Shown: positions 944 to 64,000 of the stretch, piece by piece | How the letters are laid out: every line of letters starts with the position of its first letter | How positions within the stretch are numbered: position 1 is the first letter of the stretch | Assembly (NCBI RefSeq): GCF_902459465.1 | Contig: NC_047065.1 | Coordinates: 7,750,001 to 7,814,000 of the forward strand | Direction: 5' to 3' | Source of the DNA: Asterias rubens | Taxonomy: Eukaryota | DNA: 64,000 nt | Notes under the pieces: model-generated | The model's input: only the letters and a program-made list of their open reading frames with translations | What the model was told of the DNA's origin: nothing | The model's database searches: none | Program-made: the position numbers and the translations under genes

Positions 944-1567
944 ATACAGACTGTTGCCATATGGGTTAGACCTACAGTGGCATTTAACTGGTTTGTTATT
1001 TACATTTTTTTCATATGTTTCACTAGTTTTTTCCTAAACCCCTTTTGTCTGGTTTATGTGAAATTTTGTCTGTTTGTTTGTTTGTTTGTTTGCTTAGATG
1101 ATCTTCCTGTCAAGAAAGTTGGGCAAACTCCCACAAGGGCCAGGGATAAAGATGTAAAGGCCAAGCCGGCAATAGCCAAATGTTGGTTTAACATCTATGA
1201 TAACTAATTGCACAAATCAAGAAATTATGATTCAGTAACTAGACGACAATATTTATTCAAGTCAATGTGAAATGAACGATTAGCTCGGGGGATTCCAACT
1301 CATAACATTGTAATTGCAAGTCCTGCAGTCTAACCACTGTACCACTGATGCCTTGTTTTACATGATGATTTGCATTTATAATCACATTTCATGTTCACAA
1401 TGACCACATTGCAAAAGAATTTGTACACTTTCTTCAGCTGTTCTTGCCATGTTGTAATCAATCCTTTACATATCAAACAAAATATTCATTGCCTCATTCA
1501 CTTCTAAGCCATTCTCCATTTTACTGTTGATTAAAAAAAAACATTTCTAATTTTGTTCAACTCTCAG

Positions 1568-27621: not shown

Positions 27622-27809
27622 TCAGTACAAGCCGCATCCTCGCAAGTTGTTTGCTATGATGGTATCTGTGACGGCATCAAATACAAACTGAATATTGGTA
27701 GTGTCCGTAGCACACGTCATGTGTGTATATATTTCCTTGTTGCTACTCTTGTTAAGTGCTTCAAATTGGGACTGGATGTACATGACTGCCGCTAAGTATT
27801 CATTCTCAC
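27622..27809 (-). CDS. GNAO1: G-alpha-o exon 8, terminal ([61 protein letters not shown])
   Basis: Acceptor ttattgaacag on -; 188 nt to TGA; TCAT motif; G-alpha-o-specific C-terminus NNLRGCGLY. Confidence 0.96.
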
Positions 27810-27949
27810 CTGTTCAATAAGACACAAATAATTCCGGTAATTATTGCCCAGTTTAAATAAACTTTTCCTGTCATAACTATGAAATCCATTAAAATACTTC
27901 ACTATAGGCCTACAGTACGTCATGAGATACACGAATTGGGGCTTAAAAC

Positions 27950-28928: not shown

Positions 28929-29070
28929 AGGAGACTTTCTAGGACGATAGGTGGCAGCAGATTTACCGGGTAAAGCCATTGTTCTCAGAATTATTTGCAT
29001 GCTCAGAACTACGTAAACAATGGAAATTTACCCGGTAAGTCTGCTGCCTCCTAGCGTTGGAAAGTCTCTC
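28929..29070. mobile_element. GGGAGACTTT hairpin MITE
   Basis: AT-flanked, palindromic; ends 33 nt from exon 7. Confidence 0.8.
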
Positions 29071-29103
29071 ATTAAAGAGAAACAATGACCTTTGACCTCT
29101 TAC

Positions 29104-29257
29104 CTGTGTACTCTGGGAAACAAATGGAGAGAGGAGATTTCTCAATCTTGTCCTCAAATAGATCTTTCTTGTTGAGGAAGAGGATGATTGACGTGTCAGT
29201 AAACCATTTATTGTTGCAGATTGAGTCGAAAAGTTTAAGGCTTTCATGCATCCGATT
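29104..29257 (-). CDS. GNAO1: G-alpha-o exon 7 ([52 protein letters not shown])
   Basis: cag / gtaaga; 154 nt as in Gi/o genes; NKKD motif; within ORF 29072-29323. Confidence 0.96.
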
Positions 29258-29344
29258 CTGTAAACAGAAGTGAACGGTTCTCAGTTCATATTTTTTATAC
29301 ACAAAAGTTGCACATAATATCATAACAATAATTTAGCGGATTTG

Positions 29345-29695
29345 GGTACTTTTTCAAAAAGTCCATAGATTTACATTAAACGTACAGGGTTTGAAGATAT
29401 TGATAGTGGAAAGCTTCCCTTCAAATATTACTTACTGAGGTGCTGTAGTTTTTGAGAAATGAGTAAAACAATATCATGAAAAAAACGTTTGTAAATGCTT
29501 AAAATAATTTTCGTCTCATGAGACGAAAATTATTTTCATGACATTGTTTTACTCATGTCCCAAAAACTACAGCACCTCAGCACGTAGTATTTTTAGGGAA
29601 GCTTTCTGCCATCATTATCTTCAAACTGTGTAAGTTTAGTGTAAATCTGTGGACATTGTGTTTTTTGTCCTACAAAAAGTACATACACCCTTTAA
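29345..29695. mobile_element. Kolobok-type MITE family D (long internal inverted arms)
   Basis: gtactttt..agatttacattaaac..gtttgaagat..aagcttccc arm and its reverse complement; CCT|TTAA end; other copies 38936-39140, 46359-46733, 63131-63517. Confidence 0.8.
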
Positions 29696-30073: not shown

Positions 30074-30656
30074 GGCTTTACAAACATAAAAAGACAATCT
30101 AAAAGTACCTTATAACACAATAAAATGTTTACAAAAATGGAAGAACAATACAAATTAAAAAGTACCAAATTGTTGACACGGTCAAACATGCACCAAATAC
30201 TAAAATCACTAAATATTAAATAAAAAAACGGTGAAGAAAAATCAATAGCACGCAGAAACTGATTTAAATTCGTGATGAAAGGCCTTGCCTTATAATTTTC
30301 ATTATTAAAAATGATGTTATAAATAAACCAAGACTTTCAACCAACCTAGACAGTATAACCGTGTTCTCTTAAGTGAACCACGGGTTACCAGGGTAACGGG
30401 TAATTTAGTTGTAAGACCGGATACTTGATAAACACAATGAAGAAATCTGGACCAAGAACATTGGACTAGTTGGAGATATACATGTACATGAACATTATGA
30501 CTGGCATACGCGAAAGTATTTGATTTTTTTTTTCGTTTGGAAAGATCAACATCATTCTGTCTAGAAAAAAAGGTTGTAAAACAGTCTTTCGGCAAAAGAT
30601 CGGAGTGCACATTTCTTAGTAAAACACATGACTATAGTTTGAAAGAAATGCCTTAC

Positions 30657-30786
30657 CGTTGTGTCGTCTTCTAGCAACCGTTGGTCATACCCACTTAATG
30701 CTACACAGAATATGATTGCTGTGACATCTTCAAAACAGTGTATCCACTTTTTCCTTTCTGACCTCTGACCCCCAACGTCAAATAGC
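30657..30786 (-). CDS. GNAO1: G-alpha-o exon 6 ([43 protein letters not shown])
   Basis: ctttctcaaag / gtaagg; 130 nt; DVGGQ switch II motif. Confidence 0.96.
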
Positions 30787-31039
30787 CTTTGAGAAAGTAA
30801 GAAAAATAATACAAATATTTATTGAGAATATCAAATACTTTACAATGAAAATAAGTGACTACCATGTCACGATGCAATCGAATTCCTTTTACTGAGCAGA
30901 AAACATTCTGAAATGATGCTCGCTTCCATGACGAGCAAGAGACTTGTCCTACAGGAACACAAAACTACAGGCGAAACCCAGAACATCTCCCGTTCAATGG
31001 TCGAGGTTTACCCCGACCCATACAGCCCCTCAAACACCC

Positions 31040-31210
31040 NNNNNNNNNNNNNNNNNNNNNNNNNNNNNNNNNNNNNNNNNNNNNNNNNNNNNNNNNNNNN
31101 NNNNNNNNNNNNNNNNNNNNNNNNNNNNNNNNNNNNNNNNNNNNNNNNNNNNNNNNNNNNNNNNNNNNNNNNNNNNNNNNNNNNNNNNNNNNNNNNNNNN
31201 NNNNNNNNNN
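31040..31210. other. Assembly gap (N run)
   Basis: Ns in sequence. Confidence 1.
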
Positions 31211-32840: not shown

Positions 32841-32983
32841 NNNNNNNNNNNNNNNNNNNNNNNNNNNNNNNNNNNNNNNNNNNNNNNNNNNNNNNNNNNN
32901 NNNNNNNNNNNNNNNNNNNNNNNNNNNNNNNNNNNNNNNNNNNNNNNNNNNNNNNNNNNNNNNNNNNNNNNNNNNNNNNNNNN
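32841..32983. other. Assembly gap (N run)
   Basis: Ns in sequence. Confidence 1.
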
Positions 32984-35602: not shown

Positions 35603-35615
35603 GAAACTGACTCAC

Positions 35616-35744
35616 CTGAAGTGTAAATTTTTGAAGGTGAAGTGTGTTTCAACGATGCCCGTTGTCTTGACTCGCGTCCGTAGAATGTCTTGTTCGTTAG
35701 GCAGGTAGTCGTCCGAACCGATACGGTCCAAACTGTCTAAAAAG
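35616..35744 (-). CDS. GNAO1: G-alpha-o exon 5 ([43 protein letters not shown])
   Basis: ttattttgtggattag / gtgagt; 129 nt; switch I RTRVKTTG; KNLHFR typical of G-alpha-o. Confidence 0.96.
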
Positions 35745-35837
35745 CTAATCCACAAAATAAAATAAAAAATTGTCAGAACTTACATAGTACTCAAACCCAA
35801 TTATATTTTGAAATCTATAGTTAACAGTTGAAATATC

Positions 35838-36172
35838 GAAGTCTTATATAGTGCACGTATCTACCAAACAAGGTACTCAAGGCGCTGAGTATATACAAAC
35901 TTTCAGAAAGATATGTTGTTGCAGTGATGAATTAAGAGACTAAATAAGTAAGCACCTTATAAGGGTTTACAAGGTGCTATACGGCGCATACAGCAGCCAC
36001 AGCCGGGAACACCGGAGCGAACCGCTTCTCTTTTCGATAAGTGCACTGGGTTCTTTTACATGCGTTACACAACTTATGGGACCAATGGCTTTACGTCCCA
36101 TTCGAAGGACGAAGCAATGTTTAAGTGTCTTGCTTAAGGACACACGTGTCACGGCTGGTGATTCGAACCCAA
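35838..36172 (-). mobile_element. 5'-truncated tRNA-derived SINE with Deu/Nin-like domain and L2-like tail
   Basis: ggttcgaatc B box; gggacgtaaagcc..ggtccc..catgtaaaagaacccagtgcacttatcgaaaagag..ccggtgt resembles the recalled DeuSINE domain. Confidence 0.7.
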
Positions 36173-38185
36173 ACAACTTCAGTCCTGAAGGCTTTTATTA
36201 TGCATCTGAAAGCACACTTGTGCAACAATGGTGTTTTTTCTTGTATTGTTCTCTGACAAATTTAGTCAAAATTTTCAAAGATTATTTTGTTAGATATCAT
36301 TTATGTTAGGATATACATAAAGTGAGAATATAACTATCACACCATAACGACATCTCAAACACAAAACCCCTGCCGAAGATTCCCGTCCCACAATGTCCCC
36401 CAGAACACATGATACCGCGACTTTATCTATCCATAAAAAAAAGACAAAATCACCTCGTACATTTCAACAAAAACCCGCCTCAGGCGATACTCATTTCAGC
36501 CTCTGCCATATTTATAGATTCTCCAAGCCTTTTTATCGGACTCATCTTTCCAAAGACGTTAAGTTTGACCGATACATTTCCTGTAAGTGAGCTAGAGAGG
36601 AAACTAAACGACGTAGACTGAATAGAGAAGGACGTCAGGTTATGTTATAACATCGCCCTCCTCTCTCTATACTCGTTATCATTTATCAATCTACCGATCA
36701 ATCATGTGGTAAAAGATGGCCAGAATTTGATTATCTTTTATAGAATCAAGGAAGATCATGGACGAGCGGATGTTGTTGTCGTCATTGAAAAATAGCTCAT
36801 TATCGTGAAACGAAAAAAAACCCAACAAAAAACAGTATTGTTCTTGAGAAGGTTTCAATGCCGGAATTCCAAGCATCCATTTCCCATGGAATTTTAATAT
36901 TAATTACGCTGTATCCAGGCTTCTGTTGAGTAGGAATTCTTCAGATAAGAGTAAACTATTGGTTTCCTTGGTAAGACGATTATTGATATGCATGTTTGAT
37001 AGAAACTTAAATTAGTATCGTCTTCTTTCATATACTGATAAACTAATACATCAGACAAGAGCAGGAATACCCGACTCATCTGTTTTGAGTCACAACTTGG
37101 GTCCAGTTAGAAACAAACTTGATAAAACTGTAAGCATGCCCGATACACGAAATTTACTATACAAAAAATGGTCACAGCCAAGGAGACTGTTTTTAAAGTT
37201 TTTTTTAATGGGTACGTCCATGAAAAACGAGCATAATATTCCTTAGGGATAGCTAAGTGCTCATTCCAACAGACCATCCTAATATAAAAATCAAGAAGAA
37301 TGCCAATTGCTCCTAACTGGTTCACTGGTTCAATGTACGTTTTTCTTCACCCGGAGTCAAATCTAACTCTCTAGGGGGTCAAATCTAACATGCTTTTTGA
37401 ATCGATTAGGGTCAAAATTGAACCTCAGCACTGGGTTGAATCTGGTCATAAAGGATGTTCGAAATGGCCATCACGAAGAAATGGTACAGTGGTCTGTTAA
37501 AATAAACTGTTACTTGAATTATCACCCCATACGTCATTTTTGTTTTTGTTTGTTACGGTTTTAAAGAGTATTTAAAAAATATTCCTGTAAACTCATTTAT
37601 ACCAATAAACTGTGAAGAGACTTTATCAGATTATAGAACTTCCGAAGGCGACTGTTCTACACTGGAGACGGCAAACAGCATACAGTAACAATGTGTATTC
37701 GGTCTAGTTAAATCCAAATGAGTGGGTAAATAATTGTCACATGCGTTTTCAGATTATTAAAAGCAGGGCCATCGTTTGTTTTTTGTCAACGAAAATTACA
37801 ATGAACTTTAAATAGCTCCTCATTCGTTTAAACTTCTATACATTTAACTGTTTAACTTCTGCATATGTAGAACTATAGTATCAAGTCTGGAAGCTTAATG
37901 CTACGCCTAAGTAACATTTCATTTGAAAAAAAATCTCCTAAAATTGTTCAGATATTCATTTGAAAAACATGAGTGGTCTGCGTAACGAAGAAACGAAGGA
38001 CTTAATTTGATGACATTTTCCAAAGAAGTTAACGTAGGATGTGTTCGTGGAAAACAAGAAAGTATAAATGATTGCAGTCTTTTAAAAGCCACTTAAATTG
38101 AGTCATTTCCTTAATCTATCTATAGCATAAAGGCAAAGTTTACCGTCAATTTTTATAAACCGTTCGATTATTTTAATCCTACACT

Positions 38186-38555
38186 GAAAGACCTGGATAC
38201 TGTTGGTAATTGTCAAAGACTAGTCTTCTCACTTGGAGTATCTCAACAGAATGCATCAAATAATAAACCTGTGAAAATTTGAGCTCAATTGGTCGTCAAA
38301 GTCACAGATAAGCATGAAAGAAAAAACACCATTGTCACACGAAGTTGCTTGATTTCGAGACCCTCAAATTCTAAATCTTAGGTCTCGAAATCAAATTCGT
38401 GGAAAATAACTTCTTTCTCGAAAACTACGTTACTTCAGAGGGAGCCGTTTCTCACAATGTTTTATACTATCAATCTCTCCCCATTACTCACTACCATGAA
38501 ACGTTTTATGCTAACAAGTATTTTGAGTATAATTACCAACAGTGTCCGCCTTTAA
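38186..38555 (+). mobile_element. Kolobok-type MITE family A
   Basis: TIRs and body. Confidence 0.85.
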
Positions 38556-38865
38556 AACTAACCTGGTAAAATTCATTTCAACAAATGGTAGCGTTTTCTT
38601 TTGAGATATTGTGAAGATCTAGAGCAGTTACGTCCACACATGAAGAATTATCCGTAATTGAAATATACAATGTGAGAAACGTTTCATCCAGAAACGTTTC
38701 TCATATTGAAATGTGTTTTAATCATTATCTCTAAAACCAGTTCTTTGAAGGGATTGGTTCCTTTTAACAGCTGAAGTTCTTTTCCTCCAGTAAGTTTCTA
38801 GGGTCCTTATAGTTTATTGATCAATTACTAAAGGTAAACCTCCCTCTAAAGGGTTTTGGTTTTTG

Positions 38866-38909
38866 GTCTCGACGTTTCGACTAACTTGCTCTAGTCATCG
38901 TCAGGAGAC
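38866..38909 (-). ncRNA. Minimal type I hammerhead ribozyme motif (Penelope/retrozyme-like)
   Basis: Minus strand reads GTCTC-CTGACGA-T-GACTAG-AGCAAG-TTAGTC-GAAAC-GTC-GAGAC: core boxes, 6-bp stem II, loopless palindromic stem III (ACGT), GUC triplet, 5-bp stem I. Confidence 0.8.
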
Positions 38910-38935
38910 TGAATAGGTAAGAGAAGAGTCATGAA

Positions 38936-39140
38936 AATACGTTTTTTACATGCTAAAATAATTTTCGTCTCATGATCACTTAGACGAAAATTATTTTCAT
39001 GACATTGTTTTACTCATTTCTCAAAAACTACAGAACCTCAGCAAGTAATATTTTCAGGGAAGCTTTCTATTATCTTCAAACTGTGTAAGTTTAATGTGGA
39101 CATTGTCTTTGTTGTCCTTCAAAAAGTACATAGACCCTTT
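38936..39140. mobile_element. Family D MITE, partial
   Basis: One arm ending aaaaagtacatagaccct. Confidence 0.75.
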
Positions 39141-39176
39141 CAACGTGAATGTCAGGGCTAAATGAAAACGACTTAC

Positions 39177-39337
39177 TATTTAGCAGAATCATTCAGTTGA
39201 TATTCTCTTGATCGATTGAAGCATTCCTTTATACCATGGTCGACCCAGAGTCTTTTTAAGGCGCCTAGCAGGGGGGAGGAGTAGGGTTCAGAATCTAACA
39301 TCTTGCTTACGATGTCCAGCACCATCTTACAATCATC
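39177..39337 (-). CDS. GNAO1: G-alpha-o exon 4 ([54 protein letters not shown])
   Basis: ttctcgcaaacag / gtaagt; 161 nt (G-alpha-o length); [17 protein letters not shown]. Confidence 0.96.
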
Positions 39338-39581
39338 CTGTTTGCGAGAAAGTCCAAATGTTTCAAAAGGGGTTACTGTCTTTCTTTAGAAACACAGATC
39401 AGGTAAAACCATGTGATATAACACTTGGTTACACAAAAACAAACCTCAATTATTGTCATGCAAGAAGTGTGTACAGCTCTATGGAACAAATCAACATCTT
39501 GCAATTATAATTGCAGAAATATATTTTTAAAAACTCGATCAAGGGCAGATTTCAGACGGAGGAGCTAGAGTGAACTTTAAT

Positions 39582-39727: not shown

Positions 39728-40664
39728 ATTGCGGACCTTTTTCTAAGTAGGACAGTTTCATTATCAGGGGATGCCATTGTTCCATGGATCAACCAAAACG
39801 CCTGGGTATAGACAACATCCGAGAATGGTTGGGTTGTGATAACCACCGAACTCAAAACATCAGCAATGGTAAGACGGTCTGTGGTGGGAGTAGTACCAGT
39901 GATTCCAATGGGGTACAGTTGTGGGGGGGGGGGACCACAGGCAAATGGCAAATACCTGTGGCAACATAAGTTGCATTAAGATAAGTTCACAAATCATGTT
40001 GGGTATGGAGCCCTCTTTGGTTAGACCCCAGGAGAAATTTAAACATTATTAGCTCTCCGGTGCAATCTATGACGCTTCACAATCGTTTTAAAACTTGGCC
40101 TAGGCCTATATCGTTGTACCTGTTGTGCCCATTTTTTTTAATCAGAAATTTGATGTTTTTGCCGTTTAACAAAACTTGTCCTTAGTCGGCGGAAATAAAG
40201 AGGGCGCCCGTTACGATCACCCCTATTGTTGGTGAATTAACTACAATTTTTATTTTGACTTAACACGTCAATTTAATGGTACATTTTAAAAATGTGAACT
40301 CTCTATTTTTACTACAAGGAGACGGAAGCCCCAATAAGGTACAGATGGCCTAGTCTTGCATGGTGATTAGCAAGTGACATTTTTATACACTGTGCATGTT
40401 GACACCATTGCTGTCACCAGGTTAAACAATATTGCGTGTGACTTATTTGCACACTTGTAAATACTTTCTGACTGATATTTCAATCTATTGAATAAAATAT
40501 TCTTGATATTGAATAAATACATCTTCTCCTTGAGTTTCAAAGATTGCAGGTCAAATGTCAATGCCTGGTAAGAAAATTGGCCTTTCACCATGGTTCATGT
40601 TTTGAGGAAATTTTGTTTGCATGATTAACAAAGTTTTTATATGAAGGTCTTGTTCCCAACCTAC

Positions 40665-40806
40665 CTCTCTCGCTGGATCTCCATAGGATATTTCCAGTTT
40701 CTCCATGGCTCTGACTATTGATACCATTGACTGCAACGTGTTGCTGAATACGACCGGTCTGAACACCTTGGCGTCTTCATCACTAAATCCTTCTTCGTGA
40801 ATAATT
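40665..40806 (-). CDS. GNAO1: G-alpha-o exon 3 ([47 protein letters not shown])
   Basis: ttcttccag / gtaggt; 142 nt; within ORF 40551-40820. Exons 3-8 total 904 nt; adding the usual 118+43 nt of exons 1-2 would give 354 aa plus stop. Confidence 0.95.
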
Positions 40807-40915
40807 CTGGAAGAAATCAAATAAACAGATTATTGTTAAAAGTGAACACACTGTGCAAGTATCGCGCTTGTTTGTTCGAACATTCGCCGTGAGCGAGTTT
40901 GATTCCTTCACGTGT

Positions 40916-46358: not shown

Positions 46359-46733
46359 TTAAATGGTCTATGTACTTTTTGTAGAACGAAAAACACAATG
46401 TCTACAGATTTACACTAAACTTACACCGTTTGAAGATAATGATAGTATAAAGCTTCCCTGAAAATATTAGTTGCTGAGGAGCTGTAGTTTTTGAGAAATT
46501 AGTAAAACAATGTCATGATAATAATTTTCGTCTCACTGATAATGAGACGAAAATTATTTAAGCTTTTAAAAACGTATTTTCATGACATTGTTTTACTTAT
46601 TTCTCAAAAATTACAGCACCTCAGCAACTAATATTTTATGGGAAGCTTTGTATTATCATTATCTTCAATCTGTGTAAGTTTGATGTAAGTCTGTGGACAT
46701 TGTGTTTTGTGTTAGAAAAAGTACCCAAAGGAA
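46359..46733. mobile_element. Family D MITE
   Basis: Both inverted arms present. Confidence 0.8.
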
Positions 46734-46757: not shown

Positions 46758-46900
46758 NNNNNNNNNNNNNNNNNNNNNNNNNNNNNNNNNNNNNNNNNNN
46801 NNNNNNNNNNNNNNNNNNNNNNNNNNNNNNNNNNNNNNNNNNNNNNNNNNNNNNNNNNNNNNNNNNNNNNNNNNNNNNNNNNNNNNNNNNNNNNNNNNNN
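46758..46900. other. Assembly gap (N run)
   Basis: Ns in sequence. Confidence 1.
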
Positions 46901-47814
46901 NTTGCTTTATGTAATTGCTATAATTAAAAACAGGCGTAAAACCATTCTCACATGTTACATTGGTATTTTAAACATTTAATGTCACTTAGAAGTTGAATAG
47001 TCGTATCCGGACATTTTTAAGTGAGGTGGGGGGGGGGGGCTCGATAGTTTGAGGCAGTCGTCAATTAAGATTGCACGGTCTGGTTCATAATAAATGAGGT
47101 TTACTATTTGATACGAATCAGTCATTGTATCCAAACACATTAATCTGTCATACTATCAGTTATACACGTTGGATATTTTAATATACAATGTACAAGAGAT
47201 GCACTTTTCGCCGCCCAGTGAAACAATACAACATTAAAAAATAAGGTTCGTTTTGTCATTCTGGAGTAAATTGTCAACACTGCGTCAAATTGTTTCCAAA
47301 CATGGCCAATTTGTCACAGGTGAATGAAAGCATGGTTTACTGGCGCGTAAGTAAAATCCGCTCACTGTTTATGAACAAATATAGGTCAATACATTATAAT
47401 CTTGAACTATATAATAATATACCAGCTATGGCAGGCCATGCCTACCGCCCACGCACTGATATAGCGACAAGTATAGCTAGACAGTGTTTTGTAGGACTCG
47501 GGTTATTATGTTTAATTCATTACCTTCCACGCAGCCTACGTATACCAAGGGTTCTTGTATCATTTGGCCTTCTTATGCTAGGCAAGCTCACTTTGTACAT
47601 GAATTCATGTCGCATGTATATTGCATAGCATAAATACGTTCACGTTTAGGTTAGGTGCGTTATAATTCTTTGGTGAATAACCGAAATCAATGTCAAAAGC
47701 GTTCCCAACTTTGGGAAATTTAAAAATAAAACCAACGGCTCTAAAGAATGGTAGACAGATTTCAGTCAACACACTTCATTATTATGCATTCTATTTAGAA
47801 ATTACAATAAACAT

Positions 47815-49279: not shown

Positions 49280-49710
49280 ACCAAACCAAACCAAACCAAA
49301 CCAAACCAAACCAAACCAAACCTAACCAAACCAAACTAAACCAAACCAAACCTAACCAAATCAAACTATAAACCAAACCAAACCAAACCAAACTAAACNN
49401 NNNNNNNNNNNNNNNNNNNNNNNNNNNNNNNNNNNNNNNNNNNNNNNNNNNNNNNNNNNNNNNNNNNNNNNNNNNNNNNNNNNNNNNNNNNNNNNNNNNN
49501 NNNNNNNNNNNNNNNNNNNNNNNNNNNNNNNNNNNNNNNNNNNNNNNNNNNNNNNNNNNNNNNNNNNNNNNNNNNNNCAACCCAAACCAAACCAAACACC
49601 AAAAAACCCAAACTGAACCAAACCAAACCAAACCAAACCAAACCAAGCCAAACCATAAACCAAACCAAACCAAAACAAATCAAAACAGAAACCAGACTAA
49701 ACCAAACTAT
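49280..49710. repeat. (AAACC)n microsatellite spanning an N gap (49399-49577)
   Basis: Direct inspection; explains the WFGLV ORFs. Confidence 0.95.
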
Positions 49711-63130: not shown

Positions 63131-63517
63131 TTAAAGGATTCAGGTACTTTTTGTAACGCAAAACACAATGTCCACAGATTTACATTAAACGTACACAGTT
63201 TGAAGATAACGATAGTAGAAAGCGTAGCTTAAAATATTAGTTGCTCAGGCGCTGGTTTTTTTTTTTAGAGATTAGTAAAACAATGTCATGAAAATATGTT
63301 CTTACATGTTCAAAATTACAAAATGCGTCTCATGATCACTGAAACAAAAATTATTTTCATGACATTGTTTTACCCATTTCTCAGAAACTACAACACCTCA
63401 GCATCTAATAGTGTCAGGGAAGCTTTCTACTATCATTGTCTTCAAACCGTGTAAGTTTAATGTATATCTATGGATATTGCGTTTTTTGTCCTGCAAAAAG
63501 TACATTAGAACCTTTAA
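63131..63517. mobile_element. Family D MITE, full length
   Basis: TTAA|AGG...CCT|TTAA with both inverted arms. Confidence 0.85.
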
Positions 63518-64000
63518 CTGAGCAGATGCTATTCGCACTATAGTTAGGCTCTTTGCAAAAAATATAGATATTTCAAAGTGCTAACAATCATTCACAATTA
63601 TTAATTTGTTTTTCTCTAAGATAAAATAAATCATTTTTAATCAAACGACACACTGGCTTATATGACTCGCTGATTTTACTCGATGTTTAAATCAAGACTT
63701 AAACACTTCAGCGTACATGTACAAAGGGTGAGAGTAAATGTTGTTTTTGTTATCAGGAATATAAAATCTTAAAGTGCACAACATTCCAAACATTTTTTCC
63801 AAGATGAATTGTTTTTCTTTTTTTCTAAAGAAATATTTTACTGAATTACATGTCTTCAACAAAAGCTGCACTAGTGCAGATAGATTAAAAACTTGACACA
63901 TGTTTAATATTGAATTTATGTTTAAACCCGTAAAAGCCATTGACATATTATACAAATGGTATAGTTGAAGACAGTTTTACAACGCCAAGCCTTAGGCCAA

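What the first reader, a model, noticed from the sequence alone, without database searches (positions are those of the whole stretch)
38866..38909. Minimal hammerhead ribozyme in G-alpha-o intron 4, on the transcribed strand
Seen (RNA, - strand): GUCUC CUGACGA U GACUAG AGCAAG UUAGUC GAAAC GUC/GAGAC. Stem I is 5 bp, stem II is 6 bp with one G-U, and there is one extra U after the CUGANGA box. Stem III is a loopless palindrome (ACGU). Predicted cleavage falls between 38871 and 38870, about 300 nt downstream of the exon 4 donor. Established: minimal type I hammerheads with palindromic stem III occur in Penelope-like elements and retrozymes and cleave efficiently mainly as dimers. Only one intact copy is in this intron. 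Inference: either a silent relic, or a site that could be cut when paired in trans with another transcript of the family, making G-alpha-o pre-mRNA processing sensitive to retroelement RNA.
Basis: partly seen in the sequence, partly recalled or inferred. Interest (0 to 1): 0.75.

Follow-up and report, generated by a model that had tools for sequence, protein, structure and literature searches.

The report
Penelope-type hammerhead relic in Gαo intron
The 44-base motif is a genuine minimal hammerhead ribozyme sequence, but it is one truncated copy of a jumping-gene repeat present about a thousand times in this genome, and nothing indicates that it cuts or regulates the G-alpha-o message.

Summary
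Window 38866-38909 (- strand) reads exactly as described. It has a complete hammerhead core, a 5-bp stem I, a 6-bp stem II, one extra U after CUGANGA, a loopless ACGU stem III and a GUC cleavage triplet. It lies 306 nt into the sense strand of the intron after the G-alpha-o exon that encodes residues 103-154.

It is not a chance match and not a private feature of this gene. It is a 64-67 nt fragment of a dispersed repeat:
- at least 922 copies within 3 mismatches;
- 395 copies identical to the consensus;
- about 3,400 related minimal hammerheads genome-wide.

The architecture, including the extra nucleotide, is that published for hammerheads of Penelope-like retroelements (PLEs). In this genome a sister family sits 543-560 nt downstream of GIY-YIG endonuclease reading frames in all five first-class copies checked on contig C1.

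No second copy exists in the 64-kb window. The lone RNA is predicted to fold into an inactive rod that pairs the core with the cleavage site. The active dimer is about 10 kcal/mol worse. Published PLE hammerheads cleave poorly even as dimers.

The best reading is a neutral retroelement relic. The trans-cleavage idea has no support here. The scan has noted the same repeat system on other pieces of this genome.

The parts
38866..38909 (-). Minimal type I hammerhead motif. Stem I 38909-38905 pairs with 38870-38866. Core CUGACGA is 38904-38898. The extra U is 38897. Stem II/loop II is 38896-38879. GAAA is 38878-38875. The ACGU palindrome (stem III half) is 38875-38872. C17 is 38871.
   Evidence: Sequence read; descriptor hit; family covariance model 59.6 bits, E 2e-13; 0 hits in 300 shuffles.
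38870..38871 (-). Predicted scissile bond (after C17 = 38871, before G1.1 = 38870). Cleavage was not demonstrated.
   Evidence: Position follows from the hammerhead numbering applied. No RNA-end information was obtainable (table 6: none; all runs are contigs).
38863..38929 (-). Whole extent of the retroelement fragment: about 20 nt of leader, the hammerhead, and 3 nt beyond it. Homology to the repeat family stops here on both sides.
   Evidence: 95.5-96.9% identity to L081 over 64-67 nt. In L008 and L081 the repeat unit runs on for about 240 nt more; the window copy does not. The junction after GAGACCAA is unique in the genome, with 2 loosely similar A-rich junctions.
38930..39144 (-). Unrelated, very abundant repeat of about 235 nt with an internal palindrome (MITE-like), abutting the 5' side of the fragment. 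This is context, not part of the ribozyme element.
   Evidence: 2156 first-look candidates in the genome. Further copies lie in the window at 29464-29695, 46359-46602 and 63336-63518.
38560..38851 (-). Another dispersed repeat on the 3' side (context).
   Evidence: 1450 first-look candidates, 70-85% identity, none of which includes the hammerhead.
39177..39337 (-). G-alpha-o exon (residues 103-154 of vertebrate G(o) alpha). Its GT donor is at 39176-39175.
   Evidence: Best PDB matches are all G(o) alpha, 71 bits against 43 bits or less for Gi/Gq/Gs. Spliced RNA contigs of 2671 and 886 nt cover 39177-39339. Pfam G-alpha exon hits lie on the - strand.
35744..39176 (-). Host intron, about 3.4 kb, in which the fragment lies in sense orientation. 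The next G-alpha exon is at about 35609-35743.
   Evidence: Exon-by-exon Pfam PF00503 matches. The acceptor side was not mapped with RNA.

Best explanation
The motif is a dead-on-arrival or broken fragment (64-67 nt) of a short non-coding retroelement that carries a Penelope-type minimal hammerhead at its 5' end. The element family amplified recently to about 1,000 copies. One copy landed in, or was trimmed within, a repeat-rich intron of the G-alpha-o gene in sense orientation. In the parent elements the hammerhead is thought to work only when two copies pair through the ACGU palindrome, forming a shared 4-bp stem III with swapped stem I strands, probably helped by the element's protein. Here there is a single copy, so that dimer cannot form in cis. 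The transcribed intron RNA most likely folds locally into an inactive rod and is removed and degraded with the intron. It has no effect on G-alpha-o expression. Shown: sequence, family membership, copy numbers, fragment boundaries, absence of a partner, host gene and strand. Inferred: inactivity and neutrality.
For: Family membership: 922 copies within 3 mismatches of the 34-nt core against 0 for the reversed control. 395 copies are identical to the consensus. The broad pattern gives 3961 hits against 598 for the control.

Class features published for PLE hammerheads (PMC4209133) are all present: an unpaired nucleotide between A9 and G10.1, a G10.1-C11.1 pair, palindromic 15.2/16.2, a short helix I and a long helix II.

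Covariation across the families supports stems I and II. 9 of 11 pairs show double changes, 80.6% of cells are paired against 29-44% when partners are slid, and 0 of 500 shuffles reach the observed values.

PLE link in this genome: at least 149 GIY-YIG frames, in open frames of up to 921-931 aa. All five first-class copies on contig C1 up to 13.6 Mb have a sister-family minimal hammerhead 543-560 nt downstream on the same strand. Family A copies show the optional tail of about 30 nt and the head-to-head inverted insertions typical of PLEs (tail described in PMC11167929).

Fragment status: homology covers only 38863-38929, flanked by other repeats.

No partner: nothing else in 64 kb on either strand. 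The window holds almost the whole gene body.

Folding: the monomer MFE pairs G5-A6-C7-G8 with C15.2-G16.2-U16.1-C17 (-16.2 kcal/mol, z -3.3). The active double hammerhead is -20.3 against 2 x -15.2 kcal/mol.

Literature: a single PLE min-HHR shows no detectable cleavage, and dimers and trimers cleave weakly (PMC4209133). In the anole PLE, cleavage needed the element's protein and no RNA-seq reads ended at the site (PMC11167929).
Against: Every catalytic nucleotide is intact. The copy carries GUC, the best-cleaved triplet, whereas the family consensus has GUU; only 6 copies have GUC against 395 with GUU. It lies in sense orientation in a transcribed intron. Hundreds of potential trans partners with the same stem I and the same ACGU palindrome exist in the genome. 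No RNA-end data, no cleavage assay and no comparison with related species could be obtained, so inactivity and neutrality are inferred, not shown. Nearest-neighbour energies ignore the tertiary contacts of the hammerhead core. Family B itself was not seen next to a PLE reading frame with the data I could fetch.
Confidence: 0.86

Rival explanations
1. Conditional trans-cleavage site. When family transcripts are abundant (a retroelement burst, or the PLE protein present), one of them pairs with the intronic copy through stem I and the ACGU palindrome. This forms a double hammerhead that cuts the G-alpha-o pre-mRNA 306 nt into the intron and lowers mRNA output.
For: The core is intact and has GUC. 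The orientation is sense. About 400 identical partners share the same stem I strands and palindrome, so a heterodimer would have 14 intermolecular base pairs. Contigs of runs guessed to be RNA pile up on the hammerhead bins, which may mean family expression or simply DNA/repeat signal. Protein-assisted PLE hammerhead cleavage has been reported (PMC11167929).
Against: The predicted heterodimer in the active fold (-22.5 kcal/mol) is far above the competing inactive folds (-34.6 kcal/mol; two monomers -30 to -31). Published min-HHR dimers cleave slowly even in cis (PMC4209133). No reads ended at the hammerhead site in the anole PLE (PMC11167929). From general knowledge of co-transcriptional splicing, slow intronic cleavage is not expected to disturb splicing. 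The copy differs from its consensus at 2 of 64 positions, which gives no sign of constraint.
Confidence: 0.04
2. Exapted structural element. The stable local rod (stem I, the 4-bp alternative helix and stem II) acts without cleavage, for example as a protein-binding site or splicing modulator near the 5' splice site.
For: The fold is more stable than shuffles (z -3.3) and lies 268 nt from the donor.
Against: The same fold is a property of every copy of the family, so it needs no local explanation. The neighbouring repeats form even stronger hairpins. No conservation data are available.
Confidence: 0.03
3. The fragment is part of a composite repeat (MITE-like element plus hammerhead leader) that is mobilised as one unit, rather than an independent retroelement remnant.
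For: In locus L008 the same MITE-like repeat abuts the 5' side of a family B hammerhead in the same orientation.
Against: L008 was retrieved with a query that contained both parts, so the choice of locus was biased. The junctions differ between the two loci. L081 has the same hammerhead leader without the MITE. Most MITE copies match only the first 83 nt of the query.
Confidence: 0.05
4. A chance match to the hammerhead consensus with no evolutionary relation to ribozymes.
For: Rfam hammerhead models report nothing.
Against: 0 hits in 300 shuffles. Hundreds of near-identical copies and covarying sister families exist.
Confidence: 0.01

Closest known systems
Minimal hammerheads (min-HHR) of Penelope-like elements (Cervera & de la Pena 2014, PMC4209133; dimer cleavage shown by Lunse, Weinberg & Breaker, RNA Biol 14:1499, cited in PMC6765202)
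   Same: Type I topology with an open, 4-5 bp helix I; a long helix II (6 bp here); an unpaired nucleotide between A9 and G10.1; a G10.1-C11.1 pair; no loop 3 and a palindromic 15.2/16.2 pair; thousands of mostly solitary copies per genome, grouped into covarying consensus families.
   Different: This copy is a 64-67 nt fragment with no pLTR, ORF or partner nearby. Its own family (B) is a non-coding unit of about 300 nt whose consensus uses GUU rather than GUC. I could not show that family next to a PLE reading frame; only a sister family was shown there.
Animal non-LTR retrozymes / Schistosoma Sm-alpha-type hammerhead SINE-like elements (PMC7229834; bioRxiv 10.64898/2026.07.22.740005)
   Same: Short non-coding elements that carry a type I hammerhead with a weak stem III and are probably mobilised by PLEs. 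The preprint reports them as depleted from introns and exons relative to intergenic DNA, consistent with intronic copies being tolerated leftovers.
   Different: Retrozymes are defined by tandem units that give circular RNAs. Here there is one unit fragment, no tandem, and no circular-RNA evidence.
Conserved intronic hammerheads of amniotes (HH9/HH10; de la Pena & Garcia-Robles 2010, EMBO Rep, cited in PMC7229834)
   Different: From the literature as I know it, those have a stable stem III, cleave as monomers and are ultraconserved single-copy elements. This one has no stem III hairpin, belongs to a 1,000-copy repeat, and shows no evidence of conservation.
Double-hammerhead self-cleavage of newt satellite 2 and ASBV RNAs (Forster et al. 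1988, cited in PMC4209133 and PMC6765202)
   Same: A weak stem III means that two copies must pair to build two active sites.
   Different: Those RNAs are made as multimers, so the partner is in cis. The G-alpha-o intron provides none.

Membership tests
Penelope-like-element minimal hammerhead (min-HHR) | Conserved catalytic core: C3 U4 G5 A6 N7 G8 A9, G12 A13 A14, A15.1-U16.1, H17 | tested here: met
   CUGACGA ... GAAA, then C-G, U, C17. All positions are canonical.
Penelope-like-element minimal hammerhead (min-HHR) | [quoted passage not shown] | tested here: met
   U at 38897, then G...C closing stem II. The feature is listed as class-defining in PMC4209133. It is also present in families A, C and D of this genome.
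Penelope-like-element minimal hammerhead (min-HHR) | No or minimal loop 3, with palindromic 15.2/16.2 so that two copies can share helix III | tested here: met
   A-C-G-U with no loop.
Penelope-like-element minimal hammerhead (min-HHR) | Many copies per genome forming consensus families with compensatory changes | tested here: met
   922 copies; 1146; 3961 against 598 for the control. 9 of 11 pairs show double changes and 0 of 500 shuffles are as good.
Penelope-like-element minimal hammerhead (min-HHR) | Location in the pseudo-LTR of an element encoding an RT plus GIY-YIG ORF | tested here: inconclusive
   This was not so for this copy, which is an isolated fragment. For the genome, a sister family lies 543-560 nt downstream of all five first-class GIY-YIG frames on C1. 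The family B copies listed were not next to such frames, and the RT domain was not checked because no further genome sequence could be fetched.
Penelope-like-element minimal hammerhead (min-HHR) | Self-cleavage as a dimer | not testable with these tools
   Only thermodynamic prediction was possible. The public runs are contigs without end information.
Rfam Hammerhead_1 (RF00163) and other Rfam hammerhead models | Score at or above the gathering threshold | tested here: not met
   There was no hammerhead hit at gathering, nor at E<=10 on 601 nt. The clear family copies in other loci are also missed, so the models do not cover this loopless class.
Animal non-LTR retrozyme | Two or more tandem units, each with a hammerhead, able to release a unit-length RNA | tested here: not met
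   There is a single motif in 64 kb on both strands, and only 64-67 nt of the unit is present.
Functional conserved intronic hammerhead (HH9/HH10 type) | A stable helix III that allows monomeric cleavage | tested here: not met
   Stem III would be 2 bp with no loop. The monomer MFE is an inactive alternative fold.
Functional conserved intronic hammerhead (HH9/HH10 type) | Single-copy element conserved in the orthologous intron across species | tested here: not met
   It is not single-copy. Cross-species conservation was not testable with the tools available.

The most novel reading that the evidence does not exclude
The intronic copy, which unlike its family consensus carries the optimal GUC triplet, is cleaved in vivo as a heterodimer with abundant family transcripts or with help from the Penelope-like element's protein. 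Bursts of retroelement expression would then lower G-alpha-o pre-mRNA output in trans.
Probability: 0.03. Interest if true: 0.65.

Novelty: new member of a known kind. Interest (0 to 1): 0.14.

Why it matters
It matters little as a discovery. Minimal, dimer-dependent hammerheads scattered by Penelope-like retroelements through animal genomes, introns included, have been described since 2014. The value is practical. It shows that a perfect-looking ribozyme in a neuronal signalling gene is one of roughly a thousand repeat copies. It shows that the 'extra U' is a class hallmark rather than a lesion. And it shows that Rfam hammerhead models miss this class, so a blank there means nothing. If the trans-cleavage idea were ever demonstrated, it would be a new way for retroelement RNA to act on host transcripts, but nothing here points that way.

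Tried and rejected
- Rfam scans found no hammerhead hit, either at gathering on the whole window or at E<=10 on 601 nt. The model set does not cover loopless min-HHRs, so I rejected this as evidence against the motif.
- Low-scoring miRNA-model hits at 38655-38760 and 38943-39011 are hairpins of the flanking repeats, far below gathering. I did not pursue them.
- RNA evidence: the first run search failed and the second listed only Logan contigs. Laying four runs confirmed the exon and the spliced mRNA. The signal over 38842-39147 is repeat pile-up, the unique intron bins have no RNA contigs, and no ends are reported. The 'RNA ends at 38870' test therefore could not be done.
- I looked for the rest of the roughly 300-nt unit elsewhere in the window, in case another insertion had split it. 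Only an unrelated partial copy at about 2866-2982 turned up.
- I looked for PLE ORFs in the 80 fetched loci. There was no RT or GIY-YIG. Two ORFs whose motifs looked LINE-like to me gave no Pfam hit.
- Fetching more genome loci, such as the two family B copies 5 kb apart on C22, was not possible.
- The Lunse et al. paper is not held, so it is cited through a review.
- The hypothesis that the window copy carries the histone-mRNA stem-loop seen behind family A hammerheads is rejected. Rfam Histone3 hits family A loci only, not the window, L008 or L081.

Full report
**What is there**

Read on the - strand, window 38909..38866 is GUCUC-CUGACGA-U-GACUAG-AGCAAG-UUAGUC-GAAAC-GUC-GAGAC. Mapped on the hammerhead numbering:
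- Helix I is 5 bp (38909-38905 with 38870-38866).
- The core is C3-A9.
- One unpaired U lies between A9 and G10.1.
- Helix II is 6 bp, closed by G10.1-C11.1, with one G-U pair and a 6-nt loop.
- G12-A13-A14 follow, then A15.1-C15.2-G16.2-U16.1 with no loop, then C17.
- The scissile bond would lie between 38871 and 38870.

**More than chance**

- The anchored pattern occurs once, against 0.00 expected in 100 shuffles.
- My own relaxed minimal-hammerhead descriptor finds this site and nothing else on either strand. It finds nothing in 300 dinucleotide shuffles of the window.
- Rfam reports no hammerhead, at gathering or at E<=10. It also misses the obvious family copies elsewhere in the genome. 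That blank reflects the model set, not the motif.

**Host gene**

Pfam G-alpha matches lie exon by exon on the - strand at window 40602-40808, 39179-39355, 35609-35743, 30591-30794, 29060-29290 and 27658-27852, with a first exon just beyond the window end.
- The exon upstream of the motif translates to a peptide whose best PDB matches are all G(o) alpha residues 103-154 (71 bits, against 43 bits or less for Gi, Gq, Gs and G12).
- Spliced RNA contigs of 2671 and 886 nt cover exactly 39177-39339.
- The preceding exon, with AG and GT boundaries visible, encodes the stretch that by my recollection of the human sequence is Gαo residues 54-101, which is exon 3 in vertebrates. 'Exon 4 / intron 4' is therefore plausible, although the 43-nt exon 2 was not located.
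- The motif is in sense orientation. It starts 268 nt and would cut 306 nt into an intron of about 3.4 kb.

**It is a repeat copy**

In the window's own genome (417.6 Mb):
- The 34-nt core has 922 matches within 3 mismatches, against 0 for the reversed control.
- 395 copies are identical to a consensus that has a G-C pair where the window has G-U, and GUU where the window has GUC. Only 6 copies, the window included, have GUC.
- A looser pattern ending in GAAACGTC finds 1146 sites against 61 for the control. These are dominated by a second family (A) with a different, compensated helix II.
- A still broader pattern finds 3961 sites against 598 for the control, and reveals further families.
- An alignment of 24 distinct copies from these families supports helices I and II. 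80.6% of cells are paired, against 29-44% when partners are slid. 9 of 11 pairs show changes on both sides. 0 of 500 shuffles reach any of the observed measures.
- A covariance model built from that alignment scores the window copy 59.6 bits, with the next best hit in 64 kb at 11 bits.

**What kind of repeat**

Cervera and de la Pena (PMC4209133) defined the minimal hammerheads of Penelope-like elements by exactly these traits:
- helix I of 4-5 bp and a longer helix II;
- a palindromic 15.2/16.2 pair with little or no loop 3;
- thousands of mostly solitary, covarying copies per genome.

The genome carries at least 149 GIY-YIG endonuclease matches inside open frames of up to 921-931 aa. For all five first-class copies on contig C1 up to 13.6 Mb, a minimal hammerhead of a sister family lies 543-560 nt downstream on the same strand. 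That sister family has an extra A and an AGCU palindrome. This is the expected pseudo-LTR position.

Family A units (about 150 nt) have fixed ends, an optional tail of about 30 nt in some copies, and frequent head-to-head inverted partners. These match the PLE insertion signatures described in PMC11167929 and PMC4209133.

I could not show family B itself next to a PLE reading frame.

**The window copy is only a fragment**

- Homology to the two intact family B units that I hold (L008, L081) covers 38929-38863 at 95.5-96.9% and then stops. In L008 and L081 the unit continues for about 240 nt.
- The junction after GAGACCAA is unique in the genome.
- The 5' flank (38930-39144) is a very abundant MITE-like repeat of about 235 nt, with at least three more copies in the window.
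- The 3' flank (38851-38560) is another dispersed repeat.
- The copy differs from the family consensus at two positions, both transitions, over 64 nt. That is ordinary decay. It happens to create GUC.

**Can it work here?**

A 2-bp helix III with no loop cannot close, so a monomer cannot form the three-way junction.
- As a lone RNA it is predicted to form a rod in which G5-A6-C7-G8 of the core pair with C15.2-G16.2-U16.1-C17 (-16.2 kcal/mol, z = -3.3). The cleavage site and several catalytic bases are thereby sequestered.
- The double hammerhead has swapped helix I strands and a shared 4-bp helix III. It evaluates to -20.3 kcal/mol, against -30.4 for two monomers. Heterodimers with the family consensus do no better. 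Nearest-neighbour energies ignore core tertiary contacts, so this is indicative only.
- No partner exists in cis. The window holds nearly the whole transcription unit and has no second motif.
- Published data point the same way. A single PLE min-HHR gave no detectable cleavage, and dimers and trimers cleaved weakly (PMC4209133). Reviews note very low rates even as dimers (PMC6765202). In the anole PLE, cleavage required the element's protein and no RNA-seq reads ended at the site (PMC11167929).
- The 2026 preprint on animal retrozymes reports depletion from introns and exons, that is, selection against genic copies rather than recruitment.

**RNA evidence**

Only assembled contigs were available. 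They confirm the spliced exon. They give no coverage of the unique intron bins in the runs guessed to be RNA, and no information about ends. Over the motif they show only repeat pile-up.

**Verdict**

The classification as a Penelope-type, dimer-dependent minimal hammerhead is supported. The 'silent relic' alternative is the best explanation (about 0.86). The trans-cleavage regulatory idea is not excluded, but it has no support and several counts against it (about 0.03-0.04).

The kind of element is known. This is one more member of it, in a genome that earlier notes of this scan call a sea star, which I did not verify. Those notes describe the same hammerhead repeats on other pieces of the genome. 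Their observation that family A hammerheads are followed by a histone-mRNA stem-loop holds in my loci, with Rfam Histone3 above gathering. It does not apply to the window copy or to family B.

Noticed in passing
L031:1541-1585 (+), L040:1574-1618 (+) and 1449-1494 (-): Family A hammerhead units are followed within a few bases by a sequence that passes Rfam's gathering score for the histone 3' UTR stem-loop (RF00032, 35-36 bits). Family B loci (L008, L081) and the window copy lack it. Earlier notes of the scan flagged this pairing.
   Followed up: partly
G000 C1: 1314537, 1967930, 2012703, 6288547, 7270640 (hammerheads), beside GIY-YIG matches at 1315127, 1967139, 2011897, 6289137, 7271230: A fourth hammerhead family (extra A, AGCU palindrome, CUA triplet) lies 543-560 nt downstream of GIY-YIG endonuclease frames on the same strand in 5 of 5 cases. 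These are probably the autonomous Penelope-like elements of this genome, with ORFs of up to 921 aa. A second GIY-YIG class (931-aa frames) had no hammerhead that fitted my pattern.
   Followed up: partly
genome-wide: The consensus of family B uses GUU, not GUC, at the cleavage triplet. 395 copies are identical over 34 nt, which points to a very recent burst from a master copy with a sub-optimal triplet.
   Followed up: partly
window 38930-39144, 29464-29695, 46359-46602, 63336-63518 (and inverted partial copies beside them): A MITE-like repeat of about 235 nt with an internal palindrome is very abundant (over 2,000 first-look candidates). It occurs at least four times in this window, often as nested or inverted pairs.
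   Followed up: partly
window 38925-38935 and L008:1585-1600: In two independent loci the 5' end of a family B hammerhead element abuts the same end of the same MITE-like repeat in the same orientation. This may be an insertion preference, or an effect of how L008 was found.
   Followed up: no
window 38672-38706: A perfect 14-bp inverted repeat with a 3-nt loop (GAGAAACGUUUC...) gives weak hits to several miRNA models (best 27.6 bits, gathering 81). It belongs to the dispersed repeat on the 3' side of the fragment.
   Followed up: no
window 39139-39321 in run X8 (record 32): One 1791-nt contig of an unlabelled run covers the G-alpha-o exon with 17 differences. Another contig of the same run matches the intron at 38475-38811 perfectly. 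The run may be a mixed sample, or hold a close relative or a paralogue.
   Followed up: no
window 31040-31210, 32841-32983, 46758-46901, 49399-49577: Four runs of N (637 bases in all) lie in the window.
   Followed up: no
G000 C1:28036988-28037159: Three identical family B hammerheads lie within 170 nt, one on the - strand and two on the +. This is a head-to-head plus tandem cluster that could form dimers in cis.
   Followed up: no
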